From Oikopleura dioica (Eukaryota; Animalia; Chordata), in NCBI GenBank assembly GCA_907165135.1, contig OU015566.1, positions 14,384,001 through 14,448,000 of the forward strand: a stretch of 64,000 bases of DNA. The letters run 5' to 3'. A program made the position numbers and the translations under genes. Each line of letters begins with the position of its first letter. Position 1 is the stretch's first letter. The notes beneath the pieces are model-generated. The model was not told the origin of the DNA. It did no database searches and saw nothing but the letters and a program-made list of their open reading frames with translations. Below, one piece after another: positions 37,270-49,700 of this stretch.

Positions 37270-40200
37270 TTATTTTTCAAAGCAGTGCAAAGAATAATTA
37301 ACCAGCGAGTCGACATCAATCTCGTGATAGATCTGAAAACGTAAGTCACGTGCTACGGAACAGTTACAGTCACCTGATTGTAAGCTTCGATATTTGAGTA
37401 GTTTTTAGCCGGCCGAGCTACTGCAATGTGCAGTTTATTGTCTGAAAATGAAGTCGTGATGAAAAATATTAAAAAAGTCACCTTTTGAACTGTAAATAAT
37501 AGACTGCAAAAGCCCCGTTTGGACTCTAGGGAGCACGTCGGAGCGTAATTCTGCCCTTGTTATTTGTCCATCGTCGGCTAATACCGCACTCAATGCCTGT
37601 AATGGAGTATCGAACAGCTTGAGCTAAGCCGAACTGAGCTTTTTGGAGATTCACAAATAATCAGTTGATACTTAATACTCCGGCTTGAAGAGGGCATCAT
37701 TGTATTTCGGGCATTCCCAATCCACCCCCAAATAAACTGTGTTCTCGATGACTCCCGGATCAGTTGGGTTTTCGTGGAATTCTTCCAACACTTCATCACT
37801 TCAAATTCAACATACTAATCTACTGAGACAGGGTTAAAGAGAACCTGTAGATAAGCGTCGTTATTGTATGATTAGCTCCCTGTTTCGTGTCTGCCACCCC
37901 GACAAACGCGTCCAAAGTCCGCTCTTTGCTCTTCATAAACTCAAAAACTTCTTCATAACTTGCAGAAATCTCCAAGGCCTCTCGGATCAGCATCGGAAAA
38001 GGTGTTCCTTCGGGTTGTTTGGCTTCTCCAGAGGGGTGAAATATAGATTGGTCTGGAAGTTGAACAATCGTTGAGGAAATAAGAATGCCATCTTCGTTGA
38101 TTCCAAAGGACATACCAAGCTTTCCCGCCCAGGAAACACTTTGATTCTTTCATTTTGTGACAAAAATCTTAGCTAACCTGAGAATGGACTTTTTATTGCG
38201 ACTGTGGTAGACATTTATCTGCGGAAATTCCCTAAGGACTTCAATTTTAAGAGTCGATTTCAAGCTCTTTTTACCTCAACCAGGGGTCTAAATTCGCAGT
38301 GCGAATTCGCTTTATTGTGAAGCGATGCGAAGCGAAGCGAATTCGCTTTCGCTTCGCTTCGCACTGGAGAGCAGAATTCGCTTCGCTTTCGCTTCGCAAA
38401 AATTCCCAAATTTTCGCATAGATTTTCGCACATCAAGCGACTTTGCTATTCGGAAGATTCTTTATCAAAGAGTTGGAGAGGGGCATTATTGTCAATAATT
38501 TATTGATGCTGTTATAAATTCAAGTTTTCTCAGTCTTCTGAAGACGAGTCTAATGATGGGTCTGACTCTCAATAAATCCAAGGATTGACTGGTTATCAAG
38601 CTGATCCTACCCCGGAATACACGTTGTCACCAGCCTTTTGCTAGTATGCTTGTAAGTATGCTAGAATATTTTTGAATGATCAGAATGATCTTTATGAACA
38701 GGGCTTATCTAGAATCGAAGATGATCTCCTCTCCTATCGAGCAAGGGTGACCATTCGGGCAAGAAATCGTCGATTGGCCATCCGAATGCCCGGCCGAAAT
38801 CAAGGGCCAAGAGTCGAGCCGTCCGAATACCCGGTCGAGCTGGTGATGGGATTTTCAATAGATAAGGGTTTTGCCCGAAAATTGTCCGTTTTCCCCGACT
38901 TCCCGATGCTCGAACGATCACCTCCGCTATCGAGTTTGTTACTAACTTGAAATTATCAACAGTTAGACCCACCATTCGGCTTATATTGACGAGCTGAAAA
39001 AGGTACAATAACAGATTTTTTGGGTGTAGGGCGCCCAGGTTCACAAAATTTTTAAAAGTACGAAATCAGGGGTTTGTATGCGCTCCGCGCCTGATTTTAT
39101 AGAGAAACTCATTTTTGACGTTATTAACTTTCTCTACAACCGCGCCTTCAGTCAATATGAGTCACTTTTTTGACCGAAAATTGTGAACCGGGTTCACAAA
39201 ATTGTGAACCAACCGATTGTGAAGTTCACCCAGGTTACCTGGGCGCCCGCCACCCGATTTTTTTGTTATTTTCTGCTCCAAAAATAGGTTTTTGAAATCA
39301 TCTTTCAATCCGAGCATCCGAGAATGCGGTTCAATTCAAGCGAAAAAATTTTCGCTTTTTTTCGCAATTTTCAATGATATTTCGCTTCGCTTTCGCTTCG
39401 CACATGGGCGAAGAATTCGCTTCGCTTTCGCTTCGCAAAAAATTTGAAAAAATTGTTCGCTTTCGCTTCGCTTTCGCACTAGGATTTCGGCTGATATTTA
39501 GACCCCTGCCTCAACGGATTCTCAAAATCGCCATCAAGAGTCCTCGCAATCAGCAAATCGTTCCCTTCATTTCCAAGTTTATCTCCCCAGATTCCTCAAA
39601 TCCAACATCATTAATGTCCATTCAAATGGAAGATTATGCTCACCGATGATGCTTCCGTGAGATTCACTTCGCTCAGTAAGCAAGTTCATCCAGAGGATTT
39701 TCGCTCTTAGCTCCGGCTTTTCCAATCCCGGCTGATGGAGGGTATGCATCAGGACTCCGTCGCTAATGCCGTCAAGTTCAAGCTTTATGTCCTCACTGAA
39801 TCGATGTTGCTTTCTCTTTATACTGTCATTACCTGATATAATCCCATGTTTGATCCCGAAGCTCTTCGAAGTCTCGATCGAGTTTTTGCTTCGCGCATTC
39901 GTGAAGAAATGTTTCCGGGAGCCAAATAAATTCATCAAGACACTCTTCTTTGTACCAATTCATCATATATTCCTCAGTCTTTGCCAATAAAACCAGAATT
40001 TCCGAACCCATCAAGACTCCCCGAGCAAAGCCCATTTCAAAAGGAGATCCCCAAAGATGAAGAACTGGAATTGAAGCGACATCCGTTTCGATTGTATGTC
40101 TTTCGCCTTTCACGTGACCTATCTGAGCTTTTCACTTGTTACAGTTGGGCTAACTGTAGATAAGCTACTGCCTTGACAAGCTGTTTCCATCTTCGGAGCC

Positions 40201-41902: not shown

Positions 41903-44406
41903 ATGAAATCGAGAATCAAGGAGGAGATTCAGCCCGTCGATGAGGCAAAACCGCTCAAGATTAAAAACGCGAAAGGTCGGAAAAAGAAAAAAACTCAAGT
42001 TGACGAAGAGATGATTCGTATTGAAAACTTGGCTTTTGATAAAGAAATGGACGACAATTTCAAACAATTCAGCGGAATGAAAATTCAGGTATTTTGATCT
42101 TAATAATTCTTATCCTACCTCTTCTTAAAATTGACGGCTAAAAACGTGATAGATATTTTTGAATAAATAAAAATAAGTGTTTGGACTGCGAATGCTTCGG
42201 AACTCTGCGAAAAGTTGGCGACAAAGTCTATCTTCTCACCGAAGAAGTTCTCTCTACCCGCAGCATTCATACGCAAAAGGCGGATTTGCAAAAAGATAAA
42301 ACATGGAAGGAAAAAGTGAGCCTGGCTGAGCACGGATTCGCCACCGACAAGCAGCAATACAGCTACCTCGGACTGGGATCGCTTTTCTGGATAACCATCA
42401 TGCTTATAAGTTTTAAACTTATTCATCTGTTTTATTCATAAAACTCCTTTCAGCGAATTGGCACTCTCTCCAAAGTTCAAAGGCAGTAACGACTTTCTTG
42501 ACTTCAACCTGCAGCCGAAACTACAAAGAGTGCGTCAAAATTGCTGAAATGGATATTTGCGGCCATTTGATGAAGCAATGCTACGAGACTGAAGAGTTCA
42601 TCCTCCCTGAACCGGTTTCTAAAATCGAGCATGTCAAAGCTGCGCCCCTCGAATTCTCCGAGGAAGAAAACGAAGTGAATCTGCGCCGATGCCAAAAGAA
42701 GCAGTTTTACGACCAGAATATCTGCCGCCATCTCTGCTCGACAACACTTGTACTGAAATCAACAAGGACTAACCCGATTTCTCCTTGTGAATCGATGTGT
42801 TTTGAACTGACTAAATCTTCTGAGTCAGCAGGACAAGTCTGCCCAACTCAAAAATACTGTCGGAATGGCTGCCCTTGCCCATTTTACGAGTGCGAAAAAT
42901 TCGATTCGCGGCAGAAATTCATTCCCGTCTTCGATTTGAAATCACAAATGAACACTCAATCAAATGAATACCTTGACCCCATAACTGAGCGTTGGGCAGA
43001 CCGCGTTAATGTTGGTCTCGAATTTCGAAAATTCCAATTTTCCGATTTCAACGGGAATGACAGAAAGATCAAGATATCAGATTCTTTCATACCTTATGAA
43101 CGTTTTTTTTTTATTTCCAAGCATTTCTCTTTCAAAACGAAATAAACAAAAACGGTAAAAGTCTACTGGTGCCACTTTTCTCAATGGCGAACATTATTTG
43201 GTCGATGCGATTGGCAATCTTATGAAAGTCAAGGAAAACGGAGATTCCCCCATTTTTATTGACAATCGACGTAATGGAATGTAAGAATGAATAATTTTTT
43301 GAATTTATCTTGCAAAATTCAGAGGATTTTTCGTGTTTCACTTTGGCTCCTCTATTGGAACTCATCATATCGAGATTCGTTTTGAAGAGAAGGGGACGAA
43401 GGTTTTCCCAGTTGTTGTCATCTGAAAAAGGTCAAATAGATTGGAATTAAATTTAACCTACCTTTTCTGACCGATGAAAAGTTCTCCTACTGGAAAACAG
43501 GACAAATGCTACTACTACGCTCCAGAATACAACTTGGAACGTTTCGAAGAGGCACAAGGTTATATTGCCAGTAATCATTTCAATGCCAAAGTGTCGTCGA
43601 CAAGTTTCAAGGGAGTATTCTATCTTATGAGCGTTAGGATCAGAGTTCCTTATTCACCTCACCCAATATTCGCCTAAGTGAAGGTAGGTGAAGATGCAAA
43701 TTTTTTACTTCACCTTACTTCACCTTATTTTTTCGAAAATCGGCTTTCACCTAAGTTCACCCAAAGGTGAGGTTTAGGTGACAAGTTTTCACCTCACCCT
43801 TGGGTTAATGTGAAAGGGTGACTTTGGAACTCTGGTTAGGATGGGCGATTCTTACATCAAACTCTCAACGACTTTAGCTCTGAATAGGATTCGAAAAAAC
43901 GAAGAACTCGACAAAGGGTGGAGGAAAAATGAGATTCAGCTTCCGGCAGAACTCAGAGACCTTAATCCTGTTCACGTCGTCCCTTTGATAGGAGTTGAAA
44001 ATATTTTACCAAGATAATTTTGATTGCCAGACATAATAAGCATTATTTTTTATCAGACATTATCTAAAACTTAATAAAGACGGATCTAGGAAAACTGCTC
44101 CTTATTCTGGTGACGAGGAGTGTTGTTCTTTCAAATACATTGTACTCGTTGTTGTTGGAGGCGGAGGGGAAATTTTTCACTCTTGGCAGCGAATGGATTG
44201 GCTCTCTCGTCAAATATGAAGAAAAGTCAGTTTGTTTATCGAAATTATTTGCTACCAATGATCCATCTTACACTGATCAAGGCGGGGTGATTAACGATGA
44301 ATGCGAGTACTTTGGAAATGGAATTATCAATGACGAGAGGTTTTTTCTACAAAGTTATGTGTTTGACGCTTTATTTGAGATCGAATTCGACTTCGGAAAG
44401 GCTTAA
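41903..44406 (+). CDS. Type II membrane protein with Cys-rich region (CP..CRNGCPCPFYEC) and kelch-like repeats; exon boundaries partly uncertain
   Basis: Exon-like ORFs 41903-42086, ~42180-42410 (TM segment YLGLGSLFWITIMLI), 42498-43100, 43474-44017 (with MITE) and 44110-44406. Confidence 0.6.
43641..43834. mobile_element. hAT-like MITE (194 bp) inserted in a coding exon
   Basis: TIR CAGAGTTCC...GGAACTCTG; perfect 8 bp TSD GTTAGGAT (43633-43640 and 43835-43842); internal TCACC repeats. Confidence 0.9.
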
Positions 44407-44504
44407 CAAGACCATAAATGCACTTATACGCCCGATAAGGCCCGCTTCTTACGGTACGTAAAGCAGTCTTGCTAATCTACTAAGAAAAAATCGAGATCGA
44501 GTTC

Positions 44505-46451
44505 GTGCAACAAAAAGCTCAGCAGAAAATACACGTGACGAGTAATCCGTTTTTCGCCTTCCACGACGACGTTTTTCCTGGTTTTTCAAAAAATGCTGCT
44601 CCCCAGCCACGATTTCCTCGGCCAAGCTTTTATCATAAAACAATAGTTCCCGATAATTTCTTTACTTCGCTTGAAGAACTAGCGCATATTTCAACTGTTG
44701 AAATGGAACTCAATGGAAAAGAGAAATTTCAACTCGAAATCGAAGTTGGCACTCGCTTTTTTTTGAAAGACACAAAATTTCTTGAATGCAATTTTTTTGA
44801 CGAAAACACTCTTTTGCGAGTTGGACTTTCGAAAAATGGCTCGTTTTGGATTGAATCCGACTTTTTTGACAAGTTTTTTGTTCAAAGATCAAAGAAGTCA
44901 CTTGATTTTGTGTTTTATTTTCGTTCAAAATCGTTTTTTGTTGAACTTTTTCAGGAAAAGATTGATTTAAATTTGACTAAATTTTTTATAACTATAAAAA
45001 AATCAAAATTGAAGAAAAAGGGCAATAAAAAAGAAGCTCATTCAAAAGTAAAAATAACTGGACTTGAGAAAGTCGAAAGCAGAAAACTCCGGATTTTCAA
45101 GTTCGACCGAGAAACGAAAATCAAAAATTTCATTTTGAAATCTCGATTTGATCCTCAGATAAATGTTATTTTACCTGATTCGGATGGTTTTCACAAACCA
45201 TACGCATTAAAGCCTGAAGGGTCGAAAAAGGAAGAAATATTCATCAGCAGTCCATTCGATAGCCTAAGCATTTCTTACTACGTTTACCACTCGCGACACG
45301 CACTGATAAATGGTCGGCTTCATATTTTTGGTGGATTGATTTCTCGGCAGAAGGTAATAAAATAGAGAAAATAGTCTCGTATTTTTATAGATCGCGCGAT
45401 TGGATGGCTGCCGATTCGTCGAGTTGTCTTCTCGGCTGTTGTATGATTTCAGATATGGTCATTCTGCTGTTACGATTGAAAAAGGCAGCAAAGGTGAATT
45501 TTATATGAATTGTTAGTCATTTAAAAACTTAACAGACTTTTTGACGAAAAATGACGAAAAAGTCCCAATTTTGCTATAATTTTAGATTTTTATTGGTCAA
45601 AAAGTGCTCCGAACAAGTTTTAATGGTGAATTTAACTTCGAGGCACACTAAGAAGCCAAAATATGGCTTTTTTGAAATTTTCGATTTTTTGAGGAAAATT
45701 GTTGACGGGGGGTCCTTAAAAGAAAAATACTTTAAGAATTAAGTTGCGAGTAAATTAAGTAAGAAACATATAAGAAAATTATTTCTAGCTATGATTTGTT
45801 TTGATTTTTTGGACCGAAACAAATGTCAGTTATTTGATGAATTGACAGTCAAACAGAAGGACAAAACGAATATGATACACAGATCTGGAGAATTGGCCCT
45901 GTACAATGGCCGTTTGATTGCCATCGGAGGTGGGGATGCAACAGGAGTAGTTGAGGAATTGACGGAAAATGGATGGAGAGTTTTAAGTCATTTGTCTCAT
46001 CCAAGGTAGACGTTTGCGAGGACTTTTTATTTAAAGATTTTAGATGGATTTCTTATTTTTCTGCGATCGGACTTCCTTCTGGAACTCTTTTGACCAGGGT
46101 TCTTAATCTGCGCTGGAGATTAGAAGTCGAGTCGAGTCGACTTATTTCCACAAGCACTTGTCGATTTAGAACCCTGTTTTTGACCATCGGAGGAATAGAT
46201 GAGAGAGATTTCAAATACCCTGATTTTGAAGCATTGAATGAAATTTGGGAACTGAAGAACGGAAAATGGTCGAATGTTGGCTCACTTTCAAAGGTTTATT
46301 AGTGTATTGATAAACAATTTGTTTGCTTTTTTCATCTATACTCTAGACTGTTTATCAATTATCTGCGATTTTCTTGGACAGCAGCGTATTTGTTTTTCCT
46401 GGCTTGGTTGACGCAGGCTACCCAATTATCCACAAAATTGATCTAGGTTAA
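44505..46451 (+). CDS. Kelch/beta-propeller-like protein, paralogous to 27406-28637 (may be a separate gene or a continuation of the upstream one)
   Basis: GRLHIFGG..QK|IARLDGC, ICF..KCQLFD, GELALYNGRLIAIGG, LLT..IGG, EIWELKNGKWSNVGSL; short introns between blocks. Confidence 0.7.
46095..46176. mobile_element. hAT-like mini-MITE (82 bp) inserted in frame in a coding exon
   Basis: TIR CAGGGTTCT...AGAACCCTG; 8 bp TSD with one mismatch (CTTTTGAC / TTTTTGAC); 82+8 = 90 nt = 30 stop-free codons. Confidence 0.85.
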
Positions 46452-46752
46452 AGTTCTGAGTTGTTTTCAATAATAATTATTAAAGTTAATAAAAAAATTT
46501 GAGTCAATTATGTAAATTCGGAGCTTTAAAAAGACTCGGCTGATAAAATTATTGAAACTCAAGTCATCGCGAAGCAAGAAGAACGGCAAATTTTGAATGC
46601 GATTATTTTTGTGACACCTGTTAATCAGTGCTCCAAGTATTAATTGCCTCGAGAAAATAAAATTGAATTGCTGAAAAACTGGTCGTTTGAAATCAACGAA
46701 GAGATTTTCATTGTCTAAAAGCATAAAATATTATTCTTGAAAGTTAATGATT

Positions 46753-49700
46753 TCAAAGCTCTTTATTTTGTTCAACACAGGGACAAGTATTCAAAGTCAT
46801 CACGAGTTCTTTGTTGCACTCGTCAAAGCAGTCTCGATCAGGAGGACACAAGCGAATGCAATTTGTCTAAAACCAATGTGACTTTCACTTGAAGCAATGT
46901 TCTTACATGAAATTCCAGGGCGTCTTCTCTGCATTCGATGTAGTTTTCGTTGTCAGTTTCAGCGGCTTCGCAGTTTTCCAAGCAAATCGGGTTTTCACAG
47001 CTATCGCAGCCGTTTGGGCACTTTTCTCCACAAGGACAGGAAGAAGAGCACTCTAATTATTATATAAGGAAAAAATAAATTCAGTGAATAACCGGAAAAC
47101 TCGGCGAGACAAGCATTTTCGCAAAGATGGTCGCTGCATTCACTTCTGCATTGAAGATAGTTTAGTCGACAGATTGTGTAGCATTCATCGTAGAGCTCTT
47201 CGTCTCTGGAAGAGAAACAAATTTCAAAACCATATTTCGGTCACTTACGGGCATTTGTCATCTGGTACTTCTGGTCCTTTGTAGCAAGTTTCGGGGCTTT
47301 CGCAAACGAATGATTTTGAAGTTGCATCGAAGGAAAAATTCGCATCTCGAGCAAATTTTACGAAGTAGTTTTCCTGTCATTTGGCTCTCCCATAAAGAAC
47401 ATGAATTTTATAAACATTTATCATTATGAAAATTAATTTCTTTATGAATGAACCATTCGCTGAATAAGTTCTCCATCAAAGCAAGCCGAAAGTTCCAGCA
47501 AATCATCCTCAAGCGGCTTCTCATCCTTCAGATTGGCGGATGTAGCAAGAGTTGAAAACGTGAATTTTCCAGCGTTGTTGTTGCTCACGAACTTTTCAAA
47601 ACGCTGTTTAGATATTCCGACAATTTTAGAAAAATCTCCCAAAAACGCGAATTTTCTGTCGTTCAACAAGGTGATTTCTGCAAAAGTCGTGAGAGAATAG
47701 TTGCTTTGAGGAGTGAAGGTAAACTGAATAATATAAGATCGATTATTCTTGCTTTTTTGATTACCGTTGCGTCTGAACTTGTGTAAGAGCATTTGTTTCC
47801 ACGAGTTGGTTGTGATCGAATGTAGTAAAATTCTGTGTTTTCATCAGCTCCTTGCAAAGATGCTATTGGAAAGGAGAAAGATGTAGTTGTTTGGTGCAAA
47901 AGTATGTAATTGTTTGTCAGTTTGTTGTTTTCTGCATCAACGCCGTCATAAAACTGCATCTGTTGATAATTTTGGGAGGGGAAATCGAGTAGAAATAATG
48001 TCAGATATGATCAACAGTCCTCTATTTCAGCATATGTTTGCCAACGAATCTCCGTTCCTTTTCCAAGTCCATTTTCTTTGCTCCCGATTCCAGCGAGATC
48101 TGCATCCATCGGCGCTGCGGGCACGTCTGGTTTCAAAATGACTCCATCATTTCGACAGCATTTTGACAAGATAGCCCATTTGAACTTTCCTTTTTGGTCG
48201 CCGAAACGGACTGGTCCAGTGCTAAAGTCTATCTTGAAACAGTTCTTTAATTTCTTGGTAACCTCAAAGTAACAGCAGCAATTTGGAATTCGGCGTCGAT
48301 TTTTTGGTATTGGTAGTTGTTCAGGCCGTCGTACTCCCCACTCAAGATCGGACCAGTCATCGGTCGAAGTCCAAGAGCATTTGTGAAAAGACCTGTCAAA
48401 CCGTAATCGAAGTTGAACGGAGAAGTAACCTCCAAAGAATGGACATGGGTGAGCAAGGCGGCGTAGATTCCGATTCTGGGATTTGCGTTGGCGAAAGTCA
48501 TTCCAATACCTTTCTTTGGCCTCGTCCCAGCCGGTACTGCAGCGTTAGAGAGGCCTTCGTGCATCCTTAATTACTTCATTAGAAATAAAAAGAGTGGAAA
48601 ATTTTACGTGAAAAGCCACTCTTCTCCACCGCCGATTTCCAAGTTCGCCCGACAGTGCTGATTCAAAACTTCTTTCGTGTATCTGATGGTCATTTGAGAA
48701 CAGCCAGACCATCGATCATTGAAAAATATATCACTACGCGTATTATAATTCTTAATTTCGGGAAGAGCTTTCCAGTATTGTCTATCATTGACGATCGTGA
48801 TTCCACCATACCAGCATTCATCCCTGTACGGGCAAGGAATATGACTGTCTGTATCTCCTCCTTTTATTTCTGCGTTCCAGCAGACTTTGTTCCGAGAATA
48901 TGGTTCAGAATGAATTTTCTCTTGCCTTGATTGAATTCAATATTCCGCTAAAAATCTTTTAAACTCACCTAACGTTAGCGTCGACTCTTTCACAAAGATA
49001 TTGATCTTGAAGTTGAGGAACACTTTCTAGCTTTGCAGTTGGAAAGCCATACTCACAGTCCATCCCAAAGTTGAGATTATAATTTCGACTCAGCTCATAA
49101 TAAATCTTTGCTGTTCCCCATCGGTCACAAGATGGAGGCTCCGTTTGTGGAGGCTCTAGCGAGGGAGGGCCCCAAATGTTATTTCGATTGTTCATGTATT
49201 TCTTAAGGCCAAATTCGTCAGTGTCAGCCCACCAGTCGGCCAAGTGAAAATAATTAACCAGAACAGGAGCATCTCCACCAACCAATTCCTTTCCAAGTTC
49301 CATCAATTCGCCAGACAAATCAACTTGAGTCTTCCCATCTTTTGTAACCAGCCCGTCGTAGTAGCTCCCCACAGCAGTGGTGAACATTGCTTTTGCATGT
49401 TGGGGAAAATCATTCTTTTCAATGTCTTCTTTAAAAGTTGAGCAGGGGCAGTCATCGGAGAGTCCCATAGCTCCAAAGACCTTGATCATATCTCCCCACT
49501 TCGCGATAGCTGCTCTCGGTCCTTGATTCGATGTCACAAGAATAGTAGTCGACTCAAACGGGACAAAACCAGTTCCATCCTCTCGTTTCTTCACAAACTC
49601 CTCATAAGCTCCACCGATGTGAGATCGGGCGCCTCTCGACGTACCAAACTCGAGGTCCAGTTGTTCAACAAAACAAGTTTCATCTTCTACTGGAGTCTTG

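What the first reader, a model, noticed from the sequence alone, without database searches (positions are those of the whole stretch)
43633..43842. Introner-like MITE: the 8 bp target duplication supplies both splice sites for scarless removal
A 194 bp element (TIR CAGAGTTCC) sits in a coding exon with a perfect TSD GTTAG|GAT. Unspliced, it adds 202 nt, shifts the frame and introduces stops. The first TSD copy offers an AG|GA donor and the second a TAG|G acceptor, so a 202 nt GA-AG intron (43638-43839) regenerates exactly ..MSVR MGDSY.., which stays open for about 57 more codons. In a lineage that tolerates GA donors, any insertion duplicating AGGA becomes a perfect intron: a direct mechanism linking hAT MITEs, non-canonical donors and rapid intron gain.
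Basis: partly seen in the sequence, partly recalled or inferred. Interest (0 to 1): 0.9.

Follow-up and report, generated by a model that had tools for sequence, protein, structure and literature searches.

The report
Exonic hAT transposon, candidate new intron
A small mobile DNA element recently landed inside a conserved coding exon of an Oikopleura gene and could be cut out of the RNA without a scar as an unusual GA-AG intron, a known route to new introns, but no RNA data could be found to show that this happens.

Summary
A 194-bp element (43641-43834) with perfect 9-bp terminal inverted repeats CAGAGTTCC and a perfect 8-bp target-site duplication (TSD) GTTAGGAT sits inside a coding exon. 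Three related Oikopleura contigs read straight through this site. Deleting 202 nt restores ..MSVR|MGDSY.., which matches ..MSVRLGERW.. in the closest relative.

Nine cut positions give the same mRNA. Only 43638-43839 starts with G and ends with AG.

The same gene has a homology-supported GA-AG intron at 44396-44484. A relative has GG-AG at that position. GA donors are therefore plausible here.

Splicing of the element itself is untested:
- Three RNA runs gave no read on any exon of this gene.
- No listed RNA run holds the gene.

Points against scarless splicing:
- The donor context is poor (GATCAG, against GAAAGG in the real intron).
- A better GT donor lies 5 nt upstream.
- Strong donors lie inside the element.
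- The host is a fast-evolving, multi-copy gene with a second exonic MITE.

An AG|G inside the TSD is expected by chance at 2-7% of sites.

My odds are scarless GA-AG 0.4, unrescued allele 0.37, and an in-frame GT-AG variant 0.15.

The idea is already published for Fritillaria MITE introns and for introners. This scan has also noted the same pattern repeatedly elsewhere in this genome, always without RNA.

The parts
43633..43640 (+). Target-site duplication, copy 1 (GTTAGGAT). It holds both the candidate GA donor (AG|GA at 43637/43638) and a GT (43633-43634).
43641..43834 (.). 194-bp non-autonomous hAT-like element (MITE). TIRs at 43641-43649 and 43826-43834. Twelve subterminal GGTGA/TCACC motifs. 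No coding capacity.
   Evidence: As RNA it folds into a long hairpin (-79 kcal/mol, z -5.6).
43835..43842 (+). Target-site duplication, copy 2 (GTTAGGAT). It holds the candidate acceptor TTAG|G (43839/43840).
43638..43839 (+). Candidate scarless GA-AG intron (202 nt). Not shown to be spliced.
   Evidence: It restores ..MSVRMGDSY.., matching homologs.
43633..43816 (+). Rival in-frame canonical GT-AG intron (184 nt). It would leave 18 nt of the element (+6 aa, GDFGTL) in the mRNA.
43482..43637 (+). Upstream half of the interrupted exon (..SPTGKQDKCYYYAPEYNLERFEEAQGYIASNHFNAK..MSVR).
   Evidence: tblastn to P0090, P0076, P0081 and others
43840..43993 (+). Downstream half of the interrupted exon (MGDSYIKLSTTLALNRIRKNEE..PLIG). 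It ends at a GT donor.
44396..44484 (+). Homology-supported GA-AG intron of the same gene (TTCG|GAAAGG...CTAAG|AA). The relative L003 has GG-AG at the same position.
43425..43481 (+). Non-canonical intron (AA-AG, or GA-AA if shifted by 1 nt) that is needed to keep ..VVVI-C-SPTG.. The same arrangement is found in L003.
46095..46176 (.). Second hAT-like MITE in a coding exon of the same gene. TIR CAGGGTTCT, TSD CTTTTGAC/TTTTTGAC. Element plus TSD is 90 nt, in frame and stop-free.

Best explanation
Shown: a young non-autonomous hAT-type transposon (194 bp, 8-bp TSD) inserted into a conserved coding exon of an Oikopleura-specific, multi-exon gene. The pre-insertion sequence is recovered exactly by deleting the element plus one TSD copy.

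Inferred: the allele is rescued at the RNA level by the ordinary (major) spliceosome, which removes 43638-43839 as a GA-AG intron. The AG|GA in TSD copy 1 serves as donor and the TAG|G in copy 2 as acceptor. Pairing of the TIRs brings the two sites together at the base of a hairpin. The mRNA is then identical to that of the empty allele. This would be a newborn, lineage-specific intron of the G[ACG]-AG class typical of Oikopleura dioica.
For: - The element anatomy is real and non-random.
- The site is coding and uninterrupted in three related contigs: L001 ..MSLRFGDPF.. and L003 ..MSLRLGIDW.., and L004/P0090 ..MSVRLGERW.., DNA ..ATGAGCGTTAGACTCGGC...
- Scarless removal gives the best protein match, and among the equivalent registers only GA-AG has an AG 3' end.
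- The same gene needs a GA-AG intron at 44396-44484 to keep ..FDF|EKIEIEF.. L003 has GG-AG at the same position.
- The gene also needs a still odder intron at 43425-43481, which is conserved in L003. Permissive donor use in this lineage is therefore supported by conservation.
- Published O. dioica GA-AG sites have AG upstream of the GA (PMC7072748). That is met here.
- AG|G in the TSD is uncommon by chance: 7.1% of sites, or 1.9% among nTnnnnAn sites.
- About 2.5 kb of coding sequence checked (42454-45494) shows no stop or frameshift, and the second exonic MITE is in frame and stop-free. This looks like insertions filtered for tolerability.
- The RNA hairpin juxtaposes the two TSD copies.
Against: - There is no RNA evidence at all. 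Three RNA runs gave zero reads on the exons, and no listed RNA run holds the gene.
- The donor context is poor. GATCAG has T at +3, where published GA donors have a conserved A, and it matches none of +3 to +6 of the GAAAGG seen in the gene's real GA intron.
- A better GT donor (GTTAGG, 43633) lies 5 nt upstream. With the same acceptor it removes 207 nt and shifts the frame.
- Near-consensus donors lie inside the element (AAG|GTAGGT at 43684, AAG|GTGAGG at 43766). Using them would leave a stop codon in the mRNA.
- In the predicted fold the GA donor is base-paired.
Confidence: 0.4

Rival explanations
1. Unrescued insertion allele. The MITE simply breaks this copy of a dispensable, fast-evolving, multi-copy gene. 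Transcripts are unspliced, or are spliced at stronger competing sites, and carry a frameshift or premature stop. The AGGA in the TSD is coincidence.
For: - The unspliced frame stops at 43675-43677.
- No expression of the gene was seen in any reachable RNA data.
- The family has many paralogs (75 and 24 homologs) and no known domain.
- Against a wild Tara contig of the same lineage (L005, 96% identical), the 23 substitutions in the large exon 44485-45353 split 13 non-synonymous to 10 synonymous. Five further ones in exon 45391-45494 were read in the wrong frame and are not counted. A 1-nt indel also lies in the large exon. Constraint therefore looks weak.
- This haplotype carries three lineage-specific TE insertions in the one gene (43641, 46095, 45537).
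- Stronger competing donors are present.
Against: - No other stop or frameshift is seen in about 2.5 kb of coding sequence checked.
- The second MITE is in frame and stop-free.
- GA and odder donors are used in this very gene.
- Unchecked notes from this scan report many similar exonic MITEs in other genes, which would be hard to explain as null alleles in so compact a genome.
Confidence: 0.37
2. In-frame but not scarless rescue. The canonical GT of TSD copy 1 (43633, GTTAGG) is joined to an AG inside the right end of the element (43816). This removes 184 nt and leaves six extra codons (..LMS-GDFGTL-VRMGDSY..).
For: It is the only GT-AG pair close to the element ends that keeps the frame open. 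GTTAGG fits the usual donor consensus better than GATCAG. A/G-rich ..AAG acceptors are common in this gene.
Against: It adds six residues in a conserved stretch. The acceptor lies inside the predicted hairpin stem. There is no RNA evidence.
Confidence: 0.15
3. Removal that is not ordinary splicing. This could be hairpin-guided excision defined by the TIR stem and TSD, as in euglenid non-conventional introns, or somatic DNA excision of the element by a hAT transposase.
For: The TIR hairpin is very stable. TSD-like repeats at the borders are a hallmark of euglenid non-conventional introns (PMC11282704).
Against: Nothing in larvaceans points to such a pathway. Fritillaria MITE introns are reported to be removed by the spliceosome (PMC11282704). 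hAT excision usually leaves footprints (from general knowledge).
Confidence: 0.05

Closest known systems
MITE-derived non-canonical introns of the larvacean Fritillaria borealis (Henriet et al. 2019, as summarised in PMC11282704)
   Same: Same animal class. Lineage-specific introns with TIRs and TSDs at the exon-intron borders, non-GT donors, and a proposed neutralisation of exonic transposon insertions by a permissive major spliceosome.
   Different: In Fritillaria the dominant borders are AG-AC and AG-AT, preceded by exonic TAC, and splicing was shown experimentally. Here the borders would be GA-AG, the TSD is an 8-bp hAT type, and splicing is not shown.
Introner elements of Micromonas and Aureococcus (Huff, Zilberman and Roy 2016) and the introner survey of Gozashti et al. 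2022 (both as described in PMC11282704)
   Same: A DNA transposon with TIRs and a TSD, where the TSD is co-opted as a splice site so that the insertion is removed precisely from the mRNA.
   Different: Introners carry one splice site themselves and take only the other from a 3-bp TSD. They exist as hundreds to thousands of intronic copies. Here both sites would come from the two copies of an 8-bp TSD, and the element carries no dedicated splice site at its ends. Its copy number and intron bias were not measured here.
Oikopleura dioica G[ACG]-AG non-canonical introns (11-12% of introns, PMC8008620; GA-AG logo in PMC7072748). Transposon-insertion intron gain is listed for Oikopleura in PMC3443670, Table 1, which cites Denoeud et al. 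2010.
   Same: The GA-AG class, with AG upstream of the donor. The host gene has a homology-supported GA-AG intron.
   Different: Published GA donors have a conserved A at +3, and the gene's own GA intron reads GAAAGG. The candidate reads GATCAG.
hAT superfamily elements (hobo, Hermes, Tol2; TIR and TSD features recalled from general knowledge, not checked here)
   Same: 8-bp TSD that fits nTnnnnAn (GTTAGGAT), TIRs beginning CAGAG, and repeated subterminal motifs.
   Different: No transposase. No autonomous partner with the same TIR was looked for.

Membership tests
hAT-type non-autonomous element (MITE) | 8-bp target-site duplication | tested here: met
   GTTAGGAT occurs twice, 8/8.
hAT-type non-autonomous element (MITE) | Terminal inverted repeats beginning YARNG | tested here: met
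   CAGAGTTCC / GGAACTCTG, 9/9.
hAT-type non-autonomous element (MITE) | Small and non-coding | tested here: met
   194 bp. The only ORF is read-through from the host exon.
hAT-type non-autonomous element (MITE) | Empty site in relatives | tested here: met
   L001, L003 and L004 are uninterrupted at the site. These are diverged relatives, not the same population.
hAT-type non-autonomous element (MITE) | Multiple copies in the genome | tested here: inconclusive
   RNA reads 90-95% alike to 43772-43826 come from other copies, and the X3 DNA run shows extra depth there. No second copy was found in the window or in the related loci, and none in the metagenome scan.
hAT-type non-autonomous element (MITE) | Autonomous partner that encodes a hAT transposase and has matching TIRs | not tested
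   Not searched.
Spliceosomal intron of the O. dioica G[ACG]-AG class | Junction seen in RNA | not testable with these tools
   Zero RNA reads on the exons in X11-X13. No listed RNA run holds the gene.
Spliceosomal intron of the O. dioica G[ACG]-AG class | G[ACG] at the 5' end and AG at the 3' end, with removal restoring the conserved frame | tested here: met
   43638 GA ... AG 43839. The product matches the homologs.
Spliceosomal intron of the O. dioica G[ACG]-AG class | Donor context AG|GA followed by A (PMC7072748) | tested here: not met
   The context is TAG|GATCAG. The upstream AG is present, but +3 is T. The gene's real GA intron reads G|GAAAGG.
Introner element (Huff 2016 / Gozashti 2022 sense) | Many near-identical copies that form introns in unrelated genes | not tested
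   Only unchecked notes from this scan suggest it.
Introner element (Huff 2016 / Gozashti 2022 sense) | Element and/or TSD provides the splice sites | tested here: inconclusive
   The sites exist in both TSD copies, but their use is unproven.
Fritillaria-type MITE intron | AG-AC or AG-AT borders preceded by exonic TAC | tested here: not met
   The borders would be GA-AG, preceded by TTAG.

The most novel reading that the evidence does not exclude
Scarless, TSD-defined removal is systematic in this Oikopleura lineage. Any hAT MITE whose 8-bp target contains AG|G would be excised exactly, helped by the TIR hairpin that places the two TSD copies side by side. This process would be the source of the species' unusual G[ACG]-AG introns and of its rapid intron gain, with still-polymorphic insertions such as this one being introns at birth.
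Probability: 0.15. Interest if true: 0.7.

Novelty: new member of a known kind. Interest (0 to 1): 0.35.

Why it matters
If spliced, this would be an intron at the moment of its birth in a chordate that can be cultured in the laboratory. The pre-insertion sequence is known exactly, and the insertion is young. Intron creation by a transposon could then be tested directly by RT-PCR on carriers and non-carriers. It would also tie Oikopleura's GA donors to mobile elements. The concept itself is already established in a sister larvacean and in algae, so the value lies in a clean test case, not in a new principle.

Tried and rejected
1. RNA evidence. Only reads from diverged copies of the two MITEs were laid. 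The runs may be from another lineage, or the gene may be silent in them. I could not tell which.

2. Spliced or empty-site sequence in public data. An exact 24-mer of the junction found nothing in the metagenome contigs. A TIR-gap-TIR pattern for further copies also found nothing. An exact look-up of the read-through ORF found nothing on record.

3. A same-lineage protein spanning the site. None was found. The length limits of the protein search exclude a gene model of about 1,000 aa or more and a short empty-site ORF, so this blank says little.

4. My first reading of the next intron (about 43991-44088) as GA-AG was wrong. A canonical GT-AG intron at 43994-44079 fits and is shared with L003.

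5. The intron between 43098 and 43161 could not be placed. DNA contigs of run X3 differ from the window there only by gaps (9 in 591 nt), so homopolymer length errors in the assembly are possible.

6. Rfam gave only sub-threshold miRNA-like hits on the hairpin. Pfam found no domain in the host family.

7. A relaxed whole-window MITE scan timed out.

Full report
WHAT IS THERE

GTTAGGAT occurs at 43633-43640 and again at 43835-43842. Between the two copies lies a 194-bp element with perfect 9-bp inverted termini, CAGAGTTCC and GGAACTCTG. The arms extend to 18 nt at 83% complementarity. The 18-nt terminal pattern is found only at these two ends, against 0.04 matches expected by chance. A strict scan of all 64 kb for YAG...CTR termini flanked by 8-bp repeats returned only this element and a second one at 46095-46176. 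Five shuffles returned none. The element contains twelve GGTGA/TCACC motifs and has no coding capacity. An 8-bp TSD that fits nTnnnnAn and TIRs starting CAGAG are hAT features; that statement rests on general knowledge and was not checked here.

THE HOST GENE

The element lies on the + strand in a multi-exon gene of an Oikopleura-specific family. The family has 75 and 24 homologs in two searches, several of them named Oikopleura dioica, and no Pfam domain.

Three related contigs read straight through the insertion point:
- L001..FHVMSLRFGDPFIK..
- L003..FFLMSLRLGIDWI..
- L004/P0090, the closest relative..FYLMSVRLGERWIKLSTT.., DNA ..ATGAGCGTTAGACTCGGC..

The window reads ..FYLMSVR[202 nt]MGDSYIKLSTT.. 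The insertion is therefore in conserved coding sequence, and the pre-insertion state is the sequence with the element and one TSD copy removed. Unspliced, the frame stops at 43675-43677.

INTRONS OF THE HOST GENE, PLACED BY HOMOLOGY

| Intron | Borders | Note |
|---|---|---|
| 43281-43322 | GT-AG | |
| 43425-43481 | AA-AG (or GA-AA if shifted by one base) | needed to keep ..VVVI-C-SPTG..; same odd form in L003 |
| 43994-44079 | GT-AG | shared with L003 |
| 44396-44484 | GA-AG (TTCG\|GAAAGG) | L003 has GG-AG at the same position |
| 45354-45390 | GT-AG | |
| 45495-45789 | GT-AG | |

This gene therefore already depends on a GA donor, and on an even less orthodox intron. It also agrees with published figures for O. 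dioica (PMC8008620, PMC7072748).

CAN THE ELEMENT BE SPLICED?

Because of the TSD, nine cut registers give the same mRNA. Only 43638-43839 begins with G and ends with AG, which is the GA-AG intron. The register 43633-43834 is GT-TG.

Several points count against the GA-AG route:
- The candidate donor TAG|GATCAG has the upstream AG of published GA donors but not the conserved A at +3 (PMC7072748). It resembles the gene's own GAAAGG donor only at +1 and +2.
- A better canonical donor, GTTAGG, lies at 43633. Joined to the acceptor at 43839 it removes 207 nt and shifts the frame. Joined to an AG at 43816 it gives an in-frame 184-nt GT-AG intron that leaves six extra codons.
- Near-consensus donors lie inside the element, AAG|GTAGGT at 43684 and AAG|GTGAGG at 43766. 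Using them would keep the stop codon in the mRNA.

As RNA, the region folds into a long hairpin (-79 kcal/mol, z -5.6). The hairpin puts the two TSD copies side by side but also base-pairs the GA donor.

RNA AND POPULATION DATA

No listed RNA run holds the gene. Three raw oligo-dT RNA runs laid on 42300-47300 gave zero reads on any exon. Only reads 90-95% alike to parts of the two MITEs were laid, and these come from other copies. The splice junction is therefore untested. I cannot say whether the runs are from another lineage or whether the gene is silent in them.

A DNA contig of run X3 carries the element with no substitution. That run is probably from the same stock as the assembly. Scans for the empty or spliced junction, and for further copies, in metagenome contigs found nothing.

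A wild Tara contig of the same lineage (L005, 96% identical) covers only downstream exons. It lacks the high-copy element in the intron at 45537-45714. It shows weak constraint in the large exon 44485-45353 (13 non-synonymous to 10 synonymous changes; five changes in the next exon were read in the wrong frame and are left out). It has a 1-nt indel in that exon.

CHANCE

In this gene's coding sequence, 7.1% of 8-bp targets contain AG|G and 2.9% contain AG|GA. Among nTnnnnAn targets, 1.9% contain AG|G. This is suggestive.

WEIGHING

For rescue by splicing:
- permissive donors are proven by conservation in this same gene;
- an AG|G-bearing TSD is rare by chance;
- about 2.5 kb of coding sequence checked (42454-45494) has no other lesion;
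- the second exonic MITE is in frame and stop-free.

For a dead allele:
- no expression was seen;
- the family is fast-evolving and multi-copy;
- this haplotype carries three TE insertions in one gene;
- the donor context is poor and better competing sites are present.

I put scarless GA-AG splicing at about 0.40, an unrescued allele at 0.37, the in-frame GT-AG variant at 0.15, and non-spliceosomal removal at 0.05.

WHAT IS KNOWN

- MITE-derived non-canonical introns with TIRs and TSDs at their borders are described in the larvacean Fritillaria borealis (Henriet 2019, via PMC11282704).
- Co-option of a TSD as a splice site is the introner mechanism (Huff 2016, via PMC11282704).
- Transposon-insertion intron gain is listed for Oikopleura (PMC3443670, Table 1, citing Denoeud 2010).
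- GA-AG introns are a known O. dioica trait (PMC7072748).

This locus would be a new member of that known kind. Its particular twist is that both sites would come from the two copies of an 8-bp hAT TSD. Earlier notes of this scan report the same pattern at many other places in this genome, and none of them has RNA support. They are leads only.

Noticed in passing
window 43425-43481; L003 3364-3428: A short intron that must be AA-AG (or GA-AA if shifted by 1 nt) to keep the conserved ..VVVI-C-SP.. junction. The same form and position occur in a diverged relative. In both genomes a canonical-looking G|GTC lies 6-7 nt downstream of the cut, but it cannot be used because an in-frame TGA precedes it.
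   Followed up: partly
window 44396-44484; L003 4261-4328: A conserved-position intron that is GA-AG in the window (G|GAAAGG) and GG-AG in L003 (G|GGAAGG). This supports G[ACG]-AG splicing in this gene by homology.
   Followed up: yes
window 46095-46176: A second hAT-like MITE (TIR CAGGGTTCT, TSD CTTTTGAC/TTTTTGAC) inside a kelch-like coding exon of the same gene. With its TSD it adds 90 nt in frame without a stop. RNA reads from longer copies of this family were seen.
   Followed up: partly
window 45537-45714: A high-copy element of about 178 bp inside a 295-nt GT-AG intron. Contig depth is 750-1170 in DNA run X3. It is absent from the wild Tara contig L005 and is flanked by a 9-bp imperfect repeat (CTTAACAGA / CTTAAAAGA).
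   Followed up: partly
window 38283-39506: A 1.2-kb element with TIRs CAGGGGTCTAAAT / ATTTAGACCCCTG, flanked by CCTCAAC repeats. It is hAT-like and non-autonomous by its size.
   Followed up: no
L004 330-1499 (P0090): The closest relative of this gene reads as one ORF across the positions of five window interruptions (43281, 43425, the MITE, 43994, 44396). Intron content of this gene therefore differs greatly between close Oikopleura lineages.
   Followed up: partly
L005 1-180 and window 44988: In the wild Tara contig, the exon upstream of window position 44701 is replaced by a roughly 30-bp tandem repeat array. There is also a 1-nt insertion in a T-run at 44988. This is either another disrupted allele or an error in the metagenome assembly.
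   Followed up: no
window 42761-44168: Illumina-based contigs of DNA run X3 match the window with no substitutions but with 9 and 4 gap letters. This suggests homopolymer-length errors or polymorphisms in the assembly. The positions of the gaps were not listed.
   Followed up: no
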